From: Zootoca vivipara
Lineage: Eukaryota
NCBI RefSeq assembly: GCF_963506605.1
Contig: NC_083280.1
Location: 8,060,001 to 8,124,000 of the forward strand
Reading direction: 5' to 3'
DNA: 64,000 nucleotides
In this document: positions 34,513 through 59,370 of the stretch, in pieces
How the letters are laid out: each line of letters starts with the position of its first letter
How positions within the stretch are numbered: position 1 is the first letter of the stretch
Program-made: the position numbers and the translations under genes
The notes under the pieces: model-generated
The model's input: the letters and a program-made list of their open reading frames with translations, nothing else
The model's database searches: none
Told to the model about the DNA's origin: nothing

Positions 34513-36323
34513 TATATATCTCTATACCAATTCAGGTGCTGATATTTCTGATCTCACAAATGTTTACTTAGATTTGCTTCCCTCAGCGGTTTTGCTGGCT
34601 GGAGCTAGTAGCACTGGATGCCCCAAACATCCAGAGGGGAGATTTTGGGGTGATTTTGATGTGAGCTCCATCAATTTCCCTGAGGATGACAATCAAGTGA
34701 GTGGATGCACACAGGAAAACAGGCTGGAGGCGGGTTTTTTTGGGTGGTTAGGGGGTAAGCTTTGTGCTGAAGGTCGCAGTTCTCCAACAGAAAATTGTTA
34801 GGAGGTCCTGATCCGGGTAGGGCATCCATTCTGAATGGGAGCCCCATGGCAACTGGTCCATCCAGGAGCTGTGCTGCTTTATTAGGGTGGGTGCTATAAT
34901 CTCGAAGCTACGAACATGAGTTTGACCAAACTGTGGGAGGCAGTGGAAGACAGGAGTGCCTGGCGTGCTCTGGTCCATGGGTCATGAAGTTGGACATGAC
35001 TAAGCAAGAATGTTTTCATCTGCTTACAGTGGTCTCCTAAATAAATTATAAACTTTTCCCATTCATTCTTGAATTTCTTGTCTACTTGGTCTCTGAGTTT
35101 CCTGGTCAATTTTGCCCAGTGCTTTTTTTCTGGGGTACGCATACCCCAAACATTTTGTGAATCTTTGTACTTTTGTCCATTTACTGTACAGTATTTATTT
35201 CCCCCGAAAAAAGCGCCAGTTTTGCCATTTCAGCATAGTCTAACAGCTTAATTTGCCATTCCTCTCTAGTAGGGGCTCTTTCTTATTTCCATCTCTGGGC
35301 TAGTAGCTTACAAAATAACTTTTGTAAAACAAAGAAAAAGAAAAGCAGAAGCCTTTTTATTAGGTATCGACATTCCAAAGGAACTGAAAAAAACTTTTTA
35401 TGTATGTGACAGCAGCAGCACAGATGTTACTAGCCCAGCAAAAGGATTATTGATAGGCAAGACTGCCTGCCAAACAGACAGGGTGGTTGGAAGCGGAAGG
35501 GTTGATCCTCAACCATCCCCTCCAGGCATAGGCAACCTTTGGCTCCCAGATGTTTTGGAACTACGACTCCCATGATCCCTAGCTAACAGGGCCAGTGGTC
35601 AGGGATCATGGGAGTTGTAGTTCCAAAACATCTGGGAGCCAAAGGTTGCCTATGCCTGCGGCCTATCCCTTTACCCTGCTTACCATGGAAGTTGCCATTA
35701 GCCCCTAGAGAAAGTGCTATGTCCCAAGCACAGAGAAATGTGCAGGCTGCAGGTGTTGGGGGGAGGGAGGGAGAGGAGGAAGGTAGGGCCTGTGATGAAG
35801 GGGGAGGAGAGGGGACCACTGACCCCAGCCAGGCGAATCCTCTCTTCAGCGCCTAGCACATGCTTTTCACTAAACAAATGTTAGGTAGTTGGCGCAAATC
35901 TTTTCAATGTGTATTCGCTTTGTCCCTTTTCATGGAGAGAGAGTTGGACACCTGCCCCGGCCTGATTTTGGCAGCTCCAATTAAATTGAACATCTAGCAA
36001 ATCACAGCTCAGATCATTAACACATGTCTTTGTCTCGCTCTCCAGGAACAAAGAGCTCAGATTAGTACCCAATAGAGTTGCCAACTTTTTTTTGATTGAC
36101 CCCTGTAGCTGTGCCTTAATAGCGGTGTGGAAGTGCCAACATTAGCAGGTGATAAGGACTTTCACCAGGAGGGGAAATGGTGCTTGTTTGTTTTTTAGTT
36201 TTTTGAGGTTGAGGTGTCAACAACTGGAAATCTTGGGGGGAATGGAAATACATTCAACTATCTAACCCAAACTTTTTGTTTTTGTTTTTGTTTTTGTTTT
36301 AAACAACGTAAAATGCACCATTT

Positions 36324-37125
36324 ATGTTGTTGTTGTTTAGTCGTTTAGTCCTGTCCGACTCTTCATGACCCCATGGACCAGAGCACGCCAGGCACTCCTG
36401 TCTTCCACTGCCTCCCGCTTTGGTCAAACTCATGATTGTAGCTTCGAGAACACTGTCCAACCATCTCGTCCTCTGTTGTCCCCTTCTCCTTGTGCCCTCA
36501 ATCTTTCCCATCATCAGGGTCTTTTTCAGGGAGTCTTCTCTTCTCATGAGGTGGCCAAAGTATTGGAGCCTCAGCTTCAGGATCTGTCCTTCCAGTGAGC
36601 ACTCAGGGCTGATTTCCTTCAAAATGGATAGGTTTGATCTTCTTGCAGTCCATGGGACTCTCAAGAGTCTCCTCCAGCACCATAATTCAAAAGCATCATT
36701 TCTTTGGCGATCAGCCTTCTTTATGGTCCAGCTCTCACTTCCATACATCACTACTGGGAAAACCATAGCTTTAACTATATGGACCTTTGTCGGCAAGGTG
36801 ATGTCTCTGCTTTTTAAGATGCTGTCTAGGTTTGTCATTGCTTTTTTCCCAAGAAGCAGGCGTCTTTTAATTTCGTGACTGCTGTCACCATCTGCAGTGA
36901 TCAAGGAGCCCAAGAAAGTAAAATCTCTCACTGCCTCCATTTCTTCCCCTTCTATTTGCCAGGAGGTGATGGGACCAGTGGCCATGATTTTGGTTTTTTT
37001 TTATGTTGAGCTTCAGACCATATTTTGCGCTCTCCTCTTTCACCCTCGTTAAAAGGTTCTTTAATTTCTCCTCACTTTCTGCCATCAAGGTTGTGTCATC
37101 TGCATATCTGAGGTTGTTGATATTT
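36324..37125 (-). mobile_element. Bov-B LINE 3' portion; short 3' ends at about 34899-35005 and 40660-40785
   Basis: NNLRYADDTTLMAESEE...KRRLLLG..AMTNLDSILKSRDITLPTKV RT motif, a frameshift, and (CAA)n tail. Confidence 0.92.
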
Positions 37126-40099: not shown

Positions 40100-42295
40100 G
40101 TAAGCATGGAGGTAGCTCTCTAGCAGGGTGGCTCCTGAGAGGCAGCAGGAGGAGAGAGGGGTTTGTTTGCTTGGCTTGTCAAACAGGCACTTGCTATGGA
40201 ACAGGGCAGGCCTCTGACGGGAAGCACAGTTTGCGCTGCGGACTGTGTGCCACAGGCAGGCCGAGCTAGAGGACAAGAAATTCCGCAGGGAAATCCGAAT
40301 ACGCAGGCCATGCCAGAGGCCGGATGGAAAGCCTCTAGGGGTGGTAGCTCAGTGGCAGAGCATCTGCTTGGCATGCAGAAGGTTGCAGGTGCCTGGCATC
40401 TACAGATAGGGCTGAGAATGTCCCCTGCCTGGGGTGACCAACTGCAAATATTGCATTGCACTGCACTGCACTGCACTTATATCCCACCTTTTCCCCCAAG
40501 GAGCACAAGGTAGTGCACATGGTCCTCCCCCTCCTCATTTAAGGACAGAGGAATGAAATAACTCCTTCACCCAGCACAGTTAACATAAGGACCTCACTTC
40601 CCCTGTGGCAGGATGGCCACCATCCTACATGGCTTCCAAAATAGGATTAGACTAATTTATCGAAGCTACCAACATGAGTCTGACCAAACTGCGGGAGGCA
40701 GTGCAAGACAGGAGTGCCTGGAGTGCTCTGGTCCATGGGGTCACAAAGAGTCGGACACGACTAAACGACTAAACAACAACAGCAACAATTTATGAAGGAG
40801 GAGGCTGTTGACGACTACAGTCGTACCTTGGTTTTTCAACTTCCGAAAATGTTGGAAAACCAAGGCACGGCTTCTGATTGGCTGCAGGAGCTTTCTGCAG
40901 TCCATCGGAAGCCACGGAAGCAGCGTCAGACGTTCGGGTTCCAAAGAACGTTTGCAAACCAGAACAATCCCTTCTGGGTTTGCGGCATTCGGGAGACAAA
41001 ACATTCGAGTCGCAAGGCGTTCAACAACCAAGGTACGATTGTACTAGCCAAGATGACTGTGCTGTGCTTTGCCTCCACTGTCGAAGGCAGCGATGCTTCT
41101 GAATACCAGTTGCTGGAGAAACCGCAGGAACAGAGAGTTGGGTTTCACACTGGCCTCTGGCTGGCCACTGTGAGAACAGGATGCTGGATCAGATAAGCCA
41201 TTGGCCGGATCCAGCAGGATCTTCTTATGTTCTTAAAAATGTGGTCAAAAGGTCTAGCGCGTCAACGCAGCCTATGGCTGTTGGGTATCCAAAGCTGTTC
41301 AGAGCTCCAGGAGAATTGTACTTCTCCCTGTGAAAGTCATCCTATCTGTGTCCATTTGATAGCTCAGTCGGGAGAGAGCATGAGATGGGAACCGTAACCT
41401 CAGGGTCGTGCGTTTGAGCCCCACATTAGGCAAAAGATTCCTGCATGGCAGAGGGTTGGACTAGATGACAGTTGGGATCCCTTCCAAATTTATGATTCTA
41501 TGATTGGTGACCCACCCTGAGACCTCATGGTGCAAGGAGATGATGCTGCTGATGATACAAGACTGGGCCGACTCAGTGTAAGGCAGCTTTCTGGGTTGCT
41601 ACGATGCTCCTTTCTCTCTCTTTTTGCTAGGTTTTTTGGAACAGATGCATCCAGACCAGAGGAAACTTGACGGACGCCAGGCTCTTCATCACGAGGCCGT
41701 GGGAGCCCAGCTCCAGGTTTCGTGGTGCTCGCTAGAACCCCCCAATTTCACCAACTGAGGCGAACAGGCGCACCAGGACTGTGCATCTGGCCCCAAACCG
41801 CGAGGAATGGCCATGGTAGAGAATGAGCCTCTTAAACTCAGAGCCGTGGGTTCGAGCCCCACACTGGGCACAAGATCCCTGCACTGCAGGGGGTTGGACT
41901 GGATGACCCTCGGGGGTTCCTTCTGACTCTACAATTCTGTGAAACTCTCGCCCCAGGGAGCGAGCTAGCCAGCCAGCCTTAGCGGCCTTGTCATTCCTTG
42001 CCTCCTCCGTCAGCCAAGGAGGAAATGTCTGGAAGTGGGAAGTCTTCCTGAAGGCTCGGGCTTGCTGCTCGGAAGCCGTTGACCAGAGGTCACCAGCAGC
42101 TGCACAACAGGAAGCCGCGCGGTGCTGGCTCAGAGGTGCCGGCAGCTACGCAGAAAGCCCGTCGGAGCCCCCTTGGCTTGCCCTCGTGGCTGTGGCATCG
42201 TTCAAGACACCGTCCATGGAAGCCAGGCAGGAGCTGGGAGGCAGCCGCTGTTCCCTGGCAGGAAGATGCTGTGACAAGGCGGATGCCAGCTGGGC

Positions 42296-42308
42296 ATGGA
42301 GCTGAACC
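42296..42308 (+). CDS. THPO: Thrombopoietin first coding exon (MELN + 1 nt); exon probably starts at 42014
   Basis: ggcATGGAGCTGAACC|GTGAGT: 13-nt coding stub as in other THPO genes; pyrimidine tract and AG at 42012-42013. Confidence 0.88.
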
Positions 42309-43869
42309 GTGAGTGCTGGGCTCGCCCCAAGGGATCTCAGAAGACACAGGCAGGTCTCCTGGGGAGACCGGCCTGTGGGTCAGCCACACACCCTTCTCTG
42401 CTGGGAGCCCTCCTTCTCCCCAGTCCTAGATGGCTGGAGGGAAAGGCACTCTGTGCATGGGCTGGAGCGAGGAGTCTGACTCCGGCAGACCTGGCTGAGT
42501 CTCAGGGGCTGTGGATGGTGTTGCCTCCAGTCCAGAGCATCCTGAGAAGGAGCAGGGGTTGATCTAGGTGGCCCTCAGGGCCCCTTCCAACTCTACCATT
42601 CTCTCCAGGACTTCCTATCCACTATGGATTTCCCCAAGGACAAGTCTTGCTGTTACACACAGCAGCGCCTCTCTAAAAAGCAGGGTGGTGCTCCCCCCCC
42701 CAGAAATGTTGCTTACGGGTAATTGTATGCAGATGCATGCTCATTGGACTAGTTCCTTCATTGACAAATGGTCATGTGGGTCATTGAATAACAGTACAAT
42801 CCCCTGCATGCCAAAATCAGTCCTGCTGAATTTGGTGGGGCTTACTCATGAGTGGGTACAAGATTGCAAAATAAATAATAAAAATTCCTTCCAGTAGCAC
42901 CTTAGAGACCAACTACTAAGTTTGTCATTGGTATGAGCTTTCGTGTGCATGCACACTTCTGCAGATGCAAGACAAGATTGCAGCGTGAGATTTAGTTCAT
43001 TGGGTGACGTCTTTTAATTAGCAGAGGAAAGAACTTGGATCCTGTTTTGTTTTCATGAAGCCCAGTTCAGGCCAGCGGTGAAAATTCTGGAGAAGTAACG
43101 AAACTGAAATTGCTATTTCCAGCATTCGGGTGGGTGGAGAGTGCTGTGCCTAAAACCTTCACCCTCTCCCTCTAGGTGATCCTTCCCTCCACCTCAATTA
43201 TCAGGTCTGGTTAAGGTTTCTCTGTGTTGAAGGCCAGGCTCTCTGCACATGCTCAGAGGCCCCTTTGCAGCCTCACATGTTCAGCTGCTAAGCCTTGGCA
43301 TGTGCACAACACACCATTCCAGAATACAGCAAATATTAATACAATACTGGAAGGTGTTTGAACAGGAAGGAGAAGGCACCCACCCCTTTGTAACTGAAAT
43401 GCACATTGAACCAATAATGTCTGAAATCCAGTTTCACCATCATCCTGGTCCTCTATTCATACGCAGAACATTTTCTTTCTGGGTCAAAGGAGGTGTGTGT
43501 GCACATACAATCTCTGTGTGTAGGAAGGAGAGGTACTTGTTATGTCCTTGTCATCTGCCTGATAGCTCCGCTTTGGAGGGGCAAATTTAACCGGGGAATT
43601 GGATTGGGAAGGGAATTGTGGAGTCTGTGGACAGATCCTTTGCCTGCAAACTCACCCAAATTCAGCCTCTCATTACCCGGGGCTGAGGGTTTCCTTGTCC
43701 CACCTAATTTTATCATCATCATTCATCACACTTATTTCTCAGCTTTTCCTCCATGGCTCTCAATACGTGGTTTCCTGTCCTCCTGATTTAATCCCAACAA
43801 CCCTGTGAAATAGATTGACCTGAGAGGAAAGCCCAATGTTAAATGAGGAGGGGGAGAACCTCTTTGAGG

Positions 43870-43946
43870 AGGAAGGAAGGAAGGAAGGAAGGAAGGAAGG
43901 AAGGAAGGAAGGAAGGAAGGAAGGAAGGAAGGAAGGAAGGAAGGAA
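43870..43946. repeat. (GGAA)n microsatellite
   Basis: Pure repeat about 75 nt upstream of the TBCB retrocopy. Confidence 0.98.
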
Positions 43947-44061
43947 GTCTAGGGAGCCCACCTGCCAAGCTGATTCAGAGCATACCAAACATTTGGCCAT
44001 CTTGTCCACAAATTATGCAGTCGAGTGCTTCTGTCCGAGGGGGACGGGCAGCCGGTTCGGG

Positions 44062-44802
44062 ATGAGCGTCGTGACGGGGACCCCCGCGGTGGTGTCCGTA
44101 TCCATCAGCAGCACCCTCAACTCCTTCCGGGCCCTCAAGAGATACGCCCGGGGGCTCACCCTCGCCGAGTTCAAGTGTAAGCTGGAACTGGTTGTGGGAA
44201 GTCCGGCATCATGCATGGACCTTGAGCTCTATACTCCAGATGACAAGTTTGTGATGAAACTCGACAGCGACGAGGCCTTGCTGGGGTCTTACCCCATCGA
44301 CGACGGGTGCAGGATTCATGTTATTGACACGAGTGGTGCAACCATCGGGGAATATGAAAATGTGTCAAACGTGGAGAAATTCGAGATAACCGATGATGAA
44401 TATGACAAGCGAAGAGATACAGCACGCTCCTTCATGAAAACAAGTAAGCTGGGGCACTACAATGCGGAAGAAATGATGAAGAAGGAAGCAGAGAGGGAGC
44501 AGAAGCTGGTGGAGGAGAAGGCCCTGGCGGAAGCCATTTCCGTGGGGTCAAGGTGTGAGGTGCGGGCAGCAGGGCAGCCCAACAAACGAGGGACAGTGAT
44601 GTACGTTGGCTTAACGGAGTTCAAGCCTGGTTACTGGGTCGGCATCAAGTATGATGAGCCTGTGGGGAAGCACGACGGAAGCGTCAACGGAAAGCAGTAC
44701 TTTGAGTGCCAGCTCAAGTACGGCGCCTTCGTGAAGCCTCGCTTCGTCACCGTGGGGGATTTCCCGGAAGTGGTGGACTATGGCCTGGATGACGAAATGT
44801 GA
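44062..44802 (+). CDS. TBCB: Intronless tubulin-folding cofactor B retrocopy (246 aa, intact ORF) inside a THPO intron
   Basis: Ubiquitin-like domain ([22 protein letters not shown]), coiled coil and CAP-Gly ([27 protein letters not shown]) in one uninterrupted ORF; short GC-rich 5'UTR from about 44020; 3'UTR ends in ATTAAA (45385-45390) at an assembly gap. Confidence 0.95.
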
Positions 44803-45390
44803 CGGGGAGAGGAAGAGGTGCAGGGGTGGCTGAAGGAAGCGGAGCGGGTCGCCATGCGGCCTCTGTTAATGGCTGGCTGTGGCGCTCTGATCCCATGTGC
44901 GAGGTCACTTGAGCAAGCCAAAGGGAGAAGGCGCGAAAAGCCGCTGTGTGTTCTTCGACTTGTGTTGGTGGTTTCCTTCCCCCCTTCCCTTTCTCCTGGT
45001 TGTGTCTCGTCTGTTCCGTGAAGATGCTACATCCCCATGATTTTTCTCACATTCACACCCTTCTTTGCCGGCTCAGTTAACCCAGAGAAAACTGGAGTGC
45101 CCTTGCCTTGTTGTAGCAATCCTTGAAGGGGTGGGGCCTGGGGGTGGCAGCAAAGTCGCTCCTGATTCCCCCACCCCACGCCACCCCGGTAGTAAGGCCT
45201 GCTGGTTGCAGAAGCAGTTAGTTGAGCAGGATGAAAAGAGAACCTCTGAGCAGATTTGTACAAGACCCTTCCTGCTTTTTTAAAAGTAAATGCAGACATT
45301 TCTATGACCATGCATTTTTTCCCCGTTGTGAAAAGTTGTGTTTTTTTTTTTGTGCTGCTGGCCGATGCTATGTGAATACGATAAATTAAA

Positions 45391-45526
45391 NNNNNNNNNN
45401 NNNNNNNNNNNNNNNNNNNNNNNNNNNNNNNNNNNNNNNNNNNNNNNNNNNNNNNNNNNNNNNNNNNNNNNNNNNNNNNNNNNNNNNNNNNNNNNNNNNN
45501 NNNNNNNNNNNNNNNNNNNNNNNNNN
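45391..45526. other. Assembly gap (136 N)
   Basis: Run of N where the retrocopy poly(A) tail and 3' target-site duplication would be expected. Confidence 1.
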
Positions 45527-45552
45527 TCTCTCCTCCCTCAAACCTCCCTTAG

Positions 45553-45680
45553 GGCTCCTTCTCCTCACTGTATTCGTGCTCCATATGGACCTGTTCGAGA
45601 TGAGTCCCACCAGACTGGTTTGTGACAGGCGGCTAATCCAGAAGTACATCACCGAAGCCATGGACTTGGAGGAGAAAGTG
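45553..45680 (+). CDS. THPO: Thrombopoietin coding exon 2
   Basis: cttag|(R)LLLLTVFVLHMDLFEMSPTRLVCDRRLIQKYITEAMDLEEKV|gtaagc; 128 nt; EPO/TPO helix A with first Cys. Confidence 0.95.
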
Positions 45681-46831
45681 GTAAGCAATGCTGTTACACT
45701 TCACCTGGGCAGATCGGGGCCCTTGGAGTCTTGGCATATTTTGCTGGCTTCCACAGTCTTTCCTTAAGGTTGCACCACTCACTGAGTGGGGGGCATGTGG
45801 TACGTGGCCCAGAATAATATTCAGAGCTGTCCAAGACATTTGGCACCTGAGGCAGACCCCAAAATGGGGCCTTCCTTCCCGCCGCCAGAAAAGAAGGGGT
45901 GAGGGCAGATCTACATCAGAAATGAGGGAGAAAGATTGATACTGTACTGTGACCTGTTGCCTGGTGAATTCTGCCGCCTGAGGTACTTGCCTCACTTTGC
46001 CTCATGGGTGGGCCGGCCCATGATAATACTGCCCAGCTGCAATGAAGGACACCTTCCTCAGTCTAGTGCAGGGTTTCCCAAACTTGGGTCTCCAGCTGTT
46101 TTTGGACTACAACTCCTATTATCCCTAGCTAGCAGAACCAGTGGTCAGGGATTATGGGAATTGTAGTCCAAAAACAGCCAAGTTTGGGAAACACTGGTTA
46201 AAATGTTTTGGACCGCAACTCCCATCAGCCCCAACCAGCTCAGTAGAATTTTTAACCACACAGCACACAGCGTTGGGGCAGCCACTATTTCCTGCAGTTG
46301 TGTGGATAAAATGCAGGGTGAGAACCATGTGTCTACACTAGTGGCTGAAACTGTGGAAACCTTTTGGAGAAAGTGTATTTTTGAGGTTTGATGGCTCATA
46401 ACACCTTTTTTTTTAAGTAATACCATCAATTTATATATCATTGGAAAGATAATTTAATGAAGAATGTAATGCAACAAAGTATGTTCAATTATCTGTATTC
46501 TATCAAAAGCTATAGCCAAATAACAAGAAACAGGAGTGTTTAGAGAGCTAATCAGGTGTCATCTTGTTTTGGCAACAATGGCTCATAACACATTTTTTTT
46601 GGAGTACTAATACCATAAAATTATATATCAATGGAAAGATGAGCTGCAGCCCCAAACCATGTTATTTCGGGTACCCATGAAGTTCGGCCGTATTTGCTTT
46701 GCACCTCATTTGCGGGGTGCAACTTGTTGGGGGCCAGGTGCCAGGTGGTTGCATTTGCCCTGCACATTTGGCCATTCCTGCCTGCTGGCCTGGTTGCTTC
46801 TCCTCTCAGGGGTTTTCTGTCCTTTCCGCAG

Positions 46832-58792: not shown

Positions 58793-59370
<578 letters not shown>

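What the first reader, a model, noticed from the sequence alone, without database searches (positions are those of the whole stretch)
44020..45390. Intact TBCB retrogene nested, sense-oriented, in a THPO intron
Seen: a complete 246-aa TBCB ORF with no introns, stops or frameshifts, both UTRs, many retained CpGs, and ATTAAA at the gap edge. Known: vertebrate TBCB is multi-exon and is not part of the mammalian CHRD-THPO-POLR2H block. Inference: either a young retrocopy or a functional retrogene. From recall, it differs from human TBCB at several conserved-looking positions (GKHDG for [14 protein letters not shown] for [17 protein letters not shown] for PEEDYGL).
Basis: partly seen in the sequence, partly recalled or inferred. 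Interest (0 to 1): 0.78.

Follow-up and report, generated by a model that had tools for sequence, protein, structure and literature searches.

The report
Young TBCB retrocopy inside THPO intron
A lacertid lizard genome carries a very recent intron-less copy of the tubulin-folding gene TBCB pasted into an intron of the thrombopoietin gene; it is intact because it is young, and nothing yet shows that it works.

Summary
At 44062-44802 (+) there is an uninterrupted 246-aa TBCB ORF with both Pfam domains. It has a 35-nt 5'UTR and a 588-nt 3'UTR that ends in ATTAAA at the edge of a 136-N run.

It lies in sense orientation between two exons of an EPO/TPO-family gene, most likely THPO.

Reads show it is a real processed copy. 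A DNA run (X8) holds the parental exons flanked by unlike letters, which I read as introns. Another DNA run (X1) holds window-type letters, extra depth on the exons, and a contig that crosses an exon-exon junction.

The copy is very young:
- It differs from the parent at four UTR places plus one T-run length, with no coding difference seen.
- It carries all 6 residues private to this species' TBCB.
- CpG content is undecayed: 0.71 against about 0.2 in the flanks.

So the intact ORF needs no selection to explain it.

No RNA read carried the copy's letters: 0 of 25, 0 of 28 and 0 of 19. It may still be segregating, since X1 looks heterozygous and X8 shows no trace.

This is an ordinary kind of feature. 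The scan had noted the parental TBCB on another piece, but not this copy.

The parts
44027..45390 (+). Visible part of the processed TBCB retrocopy (5'UTR, CDS and 3'UTR, with no introns)
   Evidence: Parental-type contigs of X1 and X8 start to fit at about 44027. RNA contigs of X14 fit 44110-44609 and 44608-45351. CpG o/e is 0.71 against about 0.2 in the flanks.
44027..44061 (+). 5'UTR carried by the copy. It holds two places that tell copy from parent: 44044 (A in the window, T elsewhere) and 44056 (T in the window, G elsewhere).
   Evidence: table 3. In X1 the other letters have depth 14.2 of 21.6, so both forms are present. In X8 they are 3.3 of 3.3. In X21 RNA they are 25 of 25 and 28 of 28 reads.
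44062..44802 (+). Intact TBCB ORF, 246 aa plus stop (Ubl domain and CAP-Gly domain)
   Evidence: The protein is an exact match to collection protein P0121. Residues 52-246 are identical to the 195-aa isoform P0128, which is held on another contig.
44803..45390 (+). 3'UTR, with ATTAAA at 45385-45390. Places that differ from the parent: 44881 (G in the window, T elsewhere), 45282 (A in the window, T elsewhere), and the T-run near 45338 (four T shorter in the window).
   Evidence: X8 contig 24 carries the other letters together with 34 unlike letters upstream of 44680, read as intron, so those letters belong to the parent.
44173..44680 (+). Span that holds the five former exon-exon junctions: about 44173/44174, 44319/44320, 44414/44415, 44609/44610 and 44679/44680
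   Evidence: table 8. X8 contig 23 has 766 letters, of which only 195 fit (44415-44609). X8 contig 24 fits from 44680. X1 contigs end at 44174, 44321/44320, 44415, 44609 and 44680. The Podarcis isoform P0124 departs from the main form just before C39, which agrees with the first junction.
45391..45526 (.). Run of 136 N that hides the 3' end of the copy (expected cleavage site, poly(A) tail and 3' target-site duplication). Not filled and not looked up.
42296..42308 (+). Coding part of the host gene's ATG exon (13 nt, phase 1), followed by GTGAGT at 42309
Evidence: Read.
45553..45680 (+). Next host exon (AG at 45551-45552, GT at 45681-45682), holding the start of the EPO/TPO domain. The host intron 42309-45552 contains the copy.
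   Evidence: Pfam EPO_TPO profile positions 1-25, E 0.014, 16 bits, below the 25-bit cut-off.
43863..43953 (.). (GGAA)n microsatellite about 75 nt upstream of the copy's 5' edge. It is part of the old intron and cuts contigs there.
   Evidence: One search reports 'skipped repeats 43863-43953'.

Best explanation
This is a very young processed retrocopy of the species' own spliced TBCB gene.

Inferred mechanism: a mature TBCB mRNA with the long 3'UTR form, reaching the distal ATTAAA, was reverse-transcribed by a LINE-type machinery and inserted in sense orientation. The insertion site is the 3.2-kb intron between the ATG exon and the next exon of a thrombopoietin-type gene.

The copy brought no promoter. 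Its ORF is intact simply because too little time has passed for it to decay. At present it is best read as a passenger in the THPO intron, not as a working gene. It probably still segregates in the species, because one independent individual looks heterozygous and another shows no sign of it.

Shown: intron-less structure against an intron-bearing parent, near-identity to the parent, presence in an independent DNA run, and no copy-type RNA in the data read.

Inferred: the LINE mechanism, the lack of function, and the segregating state.
For: 1. The parent has introns and the copy has none. X8 contig 23 has 766 letters, of which only 257-451 fit (44415-44609). X8 contig 24 fits from 44680 and has 34 unlike letters upstream (table 8). 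The window runs through these points without a break.

2. The copy is real in an independent study. In X1 the window-type letters at 44044 and 44056 coexist with parental ones (other depth 14.2 of 21.6). X1 contigs end exactly at the exon borders. Record 6 (44320-44444) runs across the 44414/44415 junction. Exon contigs have depth 20.1-25.4 against 13.8-17.8 in unique flank bins.

3. Youth. Only 44044, 44056, 44881, 45282 and a T-run length separate window from parent among the rows shown, and none is in the CDS. Residues 52-246 are 195 of 195 identical to isoform P0128, held on a different contig. The protein carries all 6 residues private to this species among lacertids and has 0 changes at otherwise invariant columns. 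CpG o/e is 0.71 against about 0.2 in the flanks.

4. No own expression seen. In X21 raw RNA, 25 of 25, 28 of 28 and 19 of 19 reads carry parental letters at 44044, 44056 and 44881. X14 RNA contigs are parental at 44881 and 45282. X21 depth is 0 over 43070-44005, just upstream of the copy.

5. No promoter came along: the upstream flank has CpG o/e 0.185.

Against: - The poly(A) tail and target-site duplications, the classical hallmarks, cannot be seen. The 3' end lies in the N run and no repeat links the edges.
It is also odd that it does not break at the end of exon 3.
- All four substitutions lie in UTRs and none in the 741-nt CDS. Chance gives this with p = 0.044 for 4 changes and 0.095 for 3, so mild constraint on the CDS is not excluded.
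- At 44881 X1 shows only the non-window letter (20.1 of 20.1), so that place may be private to the reference.
- Expression was tested in only one raw RNA run, of which about 6 in 100 was read. The tissue is unknown. That animal differs from the window at 10 further places in the table, so it may not carry the copy at all.
- Absence in X8 rests on contigs of depth about 4, and contigs show presence, not absence.
- One search left rows out of view: 9 of table 3, 278 of table 7 and 13,922 of table 8.
Confidence: 0.8

Rival explanations
1. It is a functional newborn retrogene: the copy is transcribed, either on its own or from the THPO promoter, and makes TBCB protein that selection already protects.
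For: The ORF is intact, with 0 changes at otherwise invariant columns. There are four UTR changes against none in the CDS, p = 0.044. The exact protein is on record on 2 contigs, which suggests that an annotation pipeline called a gene at this locus too. The reading frame is open from 43843 to the ATG, and by my count of coordinates it has the phase that would join in frame to the host's ATG exon.
Against: 0 of 25, 0 of 28 and 0 of 19 RNA reads, and no RNA contig, carry copy-type letters. There is no RNA depth in the 5' flank and no joint from the host's first exon into the copy. No CpG island or promoter was carried. An identical protein gives no new function, and near-zero divergence gives no power to detect selection.
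Confidence: 0.12
2. It is an assembly artefact: TBCB cDNA or parental reads were wrongly placed beside the N run.
For: The copy ends exactly at an N run. No record across the run was examined. At 44881 no other run shows the window's letter.
Against: The 5' side is continuous with the intron. Independent run X1 holds window-type letters at 44044, 44056, 45282 and the T-run beside parental ones. It also shows contig ends at the exon borders, a contig over an exon junction, and about 1.5-fold depth on the exons.
Confidence: 0.03
3. It is an old retrocopy, possibly shared with other lacertids, that was recently overwritten by gene conversion from the parental mRNA or gene.
For: Lacerta agilis has an old, decayed TBCB-like retrocopy (P0122), so old copies exist in the family.
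Against: Conversion from an intron-bearing parent would not cleanly renew a 1.36-kb intron-less tract including both UTRs. CpG content is undecayed throughout. P0122 lies on a 118,060,892-nt contig, against 98,226,198 and 97,165,297 for the two contigs of this species. The link between P0122 and this site is untested.
Confidence: 0.03

Closest known systems
Polymorphic gene retrocopies (retroCNVs) and young processed pseudogenes, as reviewed in PMC5470649 (passages read)
   Same: It is an intron-less copy of a spliced, broadly expressed gene. It is detected by exon-exon junction sequence and extra depth in the DNA of some individuals, is near-identical to the parent, and lies far from the parent.
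   Different: The host is a lizard. The passages read list mammals, Drosophila, mosquito, zebrafish and chicken. The empty-site allele, poly(A) tail and target-site duplication were not seen here, so the polymorphic state is inferred from contig depth in one individual and a lack of signal in another.
Lacerta agilis 'LOW QUALITY PROTEIN: tubulin-folding cofactor B-like' (XP_033000096.1 = P0122)
   Same: It is also a TBCB copy whose reading frame runs on into what is 3'UTR in the window. Its tail aligns with the translated 3'UTR of the window's copy, so it too is an intron-less copy of TBCB mRNA in a lacertid.
   Different: It is old and decayed. It differs from its own parent P0129 at 25 of 240 residues, has 9 changes at otherwise invariant columns, has lost its stop, and is flagged low quality. 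It keeps ancestral residues (S18, R90, T118, Q132, E237) that the window's copy has replaced. It is a separate, earlier event.
Parental TBCB of lacertids (Podarcis muralis XP_028597636, Lacerta agilis XP_033014519)
   Same: Same 246-aa architecture of Ubl, coiled coil and CAP-Gly, with 96% identity. The window's protein is identical over residues 52-246 to this species' own 195-aa isoform.
   Different: The parent is spliced, with at least six exons by the junctions, and makes alternative isoforms. The copy has no introns and no promoter of its own.

Membership tests
Processed retrocopy (retroposed gene copy) | Lacks the introns that the parental gene has | tested here: met
   X8 DNA contigs hold 44415-44609 and 44680 onward flanked by unlike letters. 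The window is continuous, and RNA contigs fit across the same points.
Processed retrocopy (retroposed gene copy) | A spliced parent exists elsewhere in the same genome | tested here: met
Intron-flanked exons are seen in X8, and both forms in X1. The 195-aa isoform P0128 is on a 97,165,297-nt contig, while the full protein is on 2 contigs, the longest 98,226,198.
Processed retrocopy (retroposed gene copy) | Extends from the 5'UTR to the polyadenylation signal of the mRNA | tested here: met
   It fits parental-type sequence from about 44027 to at least 45390, with ATTAAA at 45385-45390.
Processed retrocopy (retroposed gene copy) | Poly(A) tail at the 3' end | not testable with these tools
   It would lie in the N run 45391-45526, which is not to be filled.
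Processed retrocopy (retroposed gene copy) | Target-site duplications at both edges | tested here: inconclusive
   No direct repeat links 43990-44030 with 45527-45560. The 3' copy would be inside the N run.
Functional retrogene | Intact ORF | tested here: met
Functional retrogene | Transcripts that carry the copy's own letters | tested here: not met
   0 of 25, 0 of 28 and 0 of 19 reads in X21. X14 RNA contigs are parental-type. The test is weak: one raw run, about 6 in 100 read, tissue unknown, and the animal's carrier status unknown.
Functional retrogene | Purifying selection on the copy's own branch (dN/dS below 1) | tested here: inconclusive
   No coding difference from the parent was seen, so there is nothing to count. 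All 4 changes falling in UTRs has p = 0.044.
Functional retrogene | Kept across related species | not testable with these tools
   No lizard genomes can be read here. The only other lacertid copy seen (P0122) is a different, decayed one.
RetroCNV (segregating retrocopy) | Exon-junction sequence in the DNA of some but not all individuals | tested here: inconclusive
   X1 has it: record 6 with 95 + 30 letters, plus contig ends at the exon borders. X8 has none, but at depth about 4.
RetroCNV (segregating retrocopy) | An empty-site allele in the population | not tested
   The laid stretch ended at 45390, before the N run, so a flank-to-flank contig could not be recognised.
TBCB (tubulin-folding cofactor B) | N-terminal ubiquitin-like domain plus C-terminal CAP-Gly domain | tested here: met
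   PF14560 at 90.1 bits (cut-off 23.1) and PF01302 at 88.6 bits (cut-off 26.5). PDB TBCB domains match at 7e-45 and 3.6e-38.
THPO as the host gene | EPO/TPO domain encoded by the flanking exons on the same strand | tested here: inconclusive
   Four stop-free + strand pieces hit PF00758 in colinear order (profile 1-25, 24-53, 52-105, 116-153) at 16, 13, 13.7 and 18.7 bits, each under the 25-bit cut-off. One piece hits only thrombopoietin chains (5 of 5, E about 0.08). One hits thrombopoietin at E about 0.5 among noise. One hits erythropoietin at E 0.078. One hits nothing relevant. The exons were searched apart and not joined.

The most novel reading that the evidence does not exclude
This is a retrogene caught at birth that already matters to its host gene. 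The copy still segregates in the species and sits in sense orientation 1.7 kb behind the thrombopoietin start exon, carrying its own ATTAAA. THPO transcription would then either end early in it, lowering thrombopoietin output in carriers, or splice from the THPO start exon into it. The frame upstream of the TBCB start is open and in the right phase for an in-frame fusion. That would give liver-type expression of a second TBCB from a borrowed promoter.
Probability: 0.07. Interest if true: 0.6.

Novelty: new member of a known kind. Interest (0 to 1): 0.3.

Why it matters
In itself this is ordinary: abundant housekeeping mRNAs are copied back into genomes all the time, and a fresh copy is intact by default.

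Its value is practical in three ways:
- It warns annotators that one of the two records of this 246-aa protein probably stands for a promoter-less copy.
- It shows that mRNA retroposition has been active very recently in this lizard lineage, and at least twice for TBCB in lacertids.
- It offers a dated, possibly segregating marker inside THPO.

If carriers and non-carriers exist, the locus would be a natural test of what a sense-oriented, polyadenylation-signal-bearing insertion does to its host gene.

Tried and rejected
The parent was therefore reconstructed only as far as contigs and reads laid on the copy allow.
- A target-site duplication search found nothing usable.
- dN/dS was not computed because no coding difference between copy and parent was seen.
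- The five coding variants (44241, 44271, 44307, 44373, 44403) are all silent. They are differences among individuals in the parental mRNA, not copy-against-parent differences.
- The dip of X21 depth over 44474-44824 was not interpreted. The tool drops reads that resemble human DNA in conserved genes.
- Joints 42954>45165 and 42959>45163 in X1 have sides of 21-25 letters next to a very high-copy repeat. I took them as chance.
- THPO against EPO could not be settled per exon. Neighbours were checked only weakly: an Rpb8 start at 58793-59113(-), E 0.0097, and a VWC-like piece at 12012-12365(-), E 0.0059, both under their cut-offs. So 'CHRD-THPO-POLR2H block' is plausible but not proven here.
- That human TBCB lies beside POLR2I is my recall.
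- Three literature searches found no paper on a TBCB retrocopy. One search gave 0 papers. In one search none of the 9 listed concerned it. In one search none of the 12 papers listed, of 958 found, held 'TBCB'.
- Supplements were not opened.
- A rough age is not given as a result. Four changes in 1364 nt would mean at most a few million years at a rate of about 1e-9 per site per year. That rate is recalled, not computed.

Full report
WHAT IS THERE.
Reading 43500-46000 and translating 44062-44802 gives an unbroken 246-codon frame ending in TGA. Pfam finds the two domains that define tubulin-folding cofactor B: Ubiquitin_2 (90.1 bits) and CAP_GLY (88.6 bits). The best solved-structure matches are the two domains of TBCB itself.

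The protein search returned 809 proteins with E <= 1e-20 among 1481 candidates. The best was Podarcis muralis TBCB at 96% identity over the full 246 residues. ATTAAA lies at 45385-45390, and the next letter starts a run of 136 N, the only N run in the window. The only adjustment is that the copy's 5' edge is at about 44027 rather than 44020.

WHERE IT SITS.
Upstream, an ATG at 42296 opens 13 coding letters followed by GTGAGT. After the N run, an AG at 45551-45552 opens an exon that ends before GT at 45681.

Four stop-free + strand pieces between 45.5 and 50.7 kb hit Pfam EPO_TPO in colinear order (profile 1-25, 24-53, 52-105, 116-153). Each falls below the family cut-off on its own. Against solved structures:
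- one piece hits only thrombopoietin chains (5 of 5);
- one hits thrombopoietin weakly among noise;
- one hits erythropoietin;
- one hits nothing relevant.

I searched these exons one by one and left the joined model out. A start of an Rpb8 (POLR2H) profile lies at 58793-59113 on the minus strand, also under its cut-off. Earlier notes of this scan also call the host THPO. The host is thus an EPO/TPO-family gene, most likely THPO. The TBCB copy lies in the same orientation inside its 42309-45552 intron.

THE PARENT AND ITS INTRONS.
The exact look-up shows that the window's protein is on record on 2 contigs, the longest 98,226,198 nt. A 195-aa isoform, identical to residues 52-246 (195 of 195), is on one contig of 97,165,297 nt.

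Laying two DNA-type runs, one RNA-type contig set and one raw RNA run on 41900-45390 gave the direct evidence:
- In X8, a 766-letter contig fits the window only with its letters 257-451 (44415-44609). This is an exon with unlike sequence on both sides.
- Another X8 contig fits from 44680 onward and has 34 unlike letters upstream.
- In X1, contigs end at 44174, 44321/44320, 44415, 44609 and 44680.
- RNA contigs of X14 fit straight through 44110-44609 and 44608-45351.
- The first border agrees with the point where a Podarcis alternative isoform departs from the main form.

So the parent is spliced, with junctions at about 44173/4, 44319/20, 44414/5, 44609/10 and 44679/80, and the window's copy has lost all five introns.

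IS THE INSERTION REAL?
X1 comes from a different study than the runs that look like the assembly's own sample. It gives four lines of support:
- At 44044 and 44056 it holds both the window's letters and the other letters (other depth 14.2 of 21.6). The same holds at 45282 (20.1 of 37.1) and at the T-run (20.1 of 39).
- Its exon contigs have depth 20.1-25.4, against 13.8-17.8 in unique flank bins.
- Its contigs break exactly at the exon borders, as expected when an intron path and an exon-exon path share the exon.
- Its record 6 (44320-44444) runs across the 44414/44415 junction.

Caveats apply. No record across the N run was examined. At 44881 X1 shows only the non-window letter. Taken together, a misassembly is unlikely.

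HOW YOUNG.
The letters that X8 carries on the contig linked to intron sequence (T at 44881, T at 45282, four more T near 45338) are the parent's. The letters T and G at 44044 and 44056 are the only ones in X8 and in all X21 RNA reads. Among the rows shown, the copy therefore differs from the parent at four UTR places and one homopolymer length, and nowhere in the CDS. Nine rows of table 3 were not shown.

Three further points agree:
- The protein carries all 6 residues that are private to this species among the 6 lacertid sequences aligned (T90, N103, D112, R118, H132, V150), and has no change at any otherwise invariant column.
- CpG observed/expected is 0.71 in the copy (0.835 in the CDS), against 0.18-0.22 in the intron around it. 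Methylation decay has hardly begun.
H in GKHDG is in 13 of the 14 aligned sequences. T in KTSKLG and the extra residue before DYGL are in all 6 lacertid sequences. VV is also in the Lacerta agilis parent.

That all four changes fall in the 623 UTR letters and none in the 741 coding letters has p = 0.044 by chance. This is suggestive at most.

IS IT EXPRESSED?
In the raw RNA run X21, all reads at the telling places carry the parent's letters: 25 of 25 at 44044, 28 of 28 at 44056 and 19 of 19 at 44881. The X14 RNA contigs are parental at 44881 and 45282. X21 has no depth over 43070-44005 and shows no joint from the host's first exon.

This is weak negative evidence. Only about 6 in 100 of one run was read and the tissue is unknown. 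The animal differs from the window at 10 further places, so it may belong to another lineage without the copy. Contigs also drop rare variants. The copy brought no CpG island.

IS IT FIXED?
X1 is heterozygous in the flank (for example, other depth 7 of 14.4 at 43722-43785). The window-type contig at 44044 has depth 7.4, about half of the flank depth. The exon depth fits two parental copies plus one retrocopy better than plus two.

X8 differs from the window at 10 or more flank places and by a 20-nt and a 27-nt indel. It shows only parental letters, unbranched intron-exon contigs, and exon depth (4.9-6.5) like its flank depth (about 4). It also lacks cover over 43582-44026.

I read this as a probable segregating insertion tied to the reference-like haplotype. 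Depth is low, no empty-site record was seen, and the tool warns that contigs show presence only.

COMPARISON.
This is what the literature calls a young retrocopy or retroCNV. The review PMC5470649 (passages read) names exon-exon junction reads in some individuals plus read depth as the standard evidence. It lists mammals, Drosophila, mosquito, zebrafish and chicken as studied.

Lacerta agilis has its own TBCB-like copy (P0122), which is a different and much older event:
- it differs from its parent at 25 of 240 residues;
- it has 9 changes at otherwise invariant columns;
- its frame runs on into the 3'UTR;
- it keeps ancestral residues.

Three paper searches found nothing on TBCB retrocopies.

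VERDICT.
The copy is real, intact and nested in sense orientation in a THPO-type intron, but it is ordinary. It is a newborn processed copy whose intactness reflects age, with no sign of expression. The bold reading that remains open is that it segregates and interferes with, or borrows, THPO transcription.

Noticed in passing
window 42836-43069 and 42485-42601: A very high-copy repeat lies inside the same THPO intron. Summed contig depth reaches 1.47 million in X1, there is heavy RNA cover in X21 (212-493), and several 'opposite strands' joints at 42901-42967 suggest a hairpin-forming element.
   Followed up: no
Lacerta agilis protein P0122 (XP_033000096.1), contig of 118,060,892 nt: A second, older and decayed TBCB retrocopy exists in another lacertid. 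It is annotated as a low-quality TBCB-like protein whose frame runs into the 3'UTR.
   Followed up: partly
window 42392 and 43323: Run X8 carries a 20-nt deletion and a 27-nt insertion in the THPO intron, plus about ten substitutions, relative to the window. Part of this haplotype (43127, 43141, 43171, 43180) is shared with one haplotype of X1.
   Followed up: no
window 45176-45390: X21 RNA depth falls from 38.3 (45176-45292) to 1.94 (45293-45390). This suggests most parental TBCB mRNAs end at a proximal site near 45290-45300, while the retrocopy derives from the rarer long 3'UTR form that reaches the ATTAAA at 45385.
   Followed up: no
window 58793-59113 (-) and 12012-12365 (-): There is a likely first coding exon of POLR2H (Rpb8 profile 1-21, E 0.0097) and a VWC-type cysteine-rich piece that could be the last chordin repeat (E 0.0059). 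Both are below the Pfam cut-offs.
   Followed up: partly
window 36302-37000 (-): A 233-aa stop-free piece looks by eye like the tail of a LINE reverse-transcriptase ORF, but it gave no Pfam family at E <= 0.1.
   Followed up: partly
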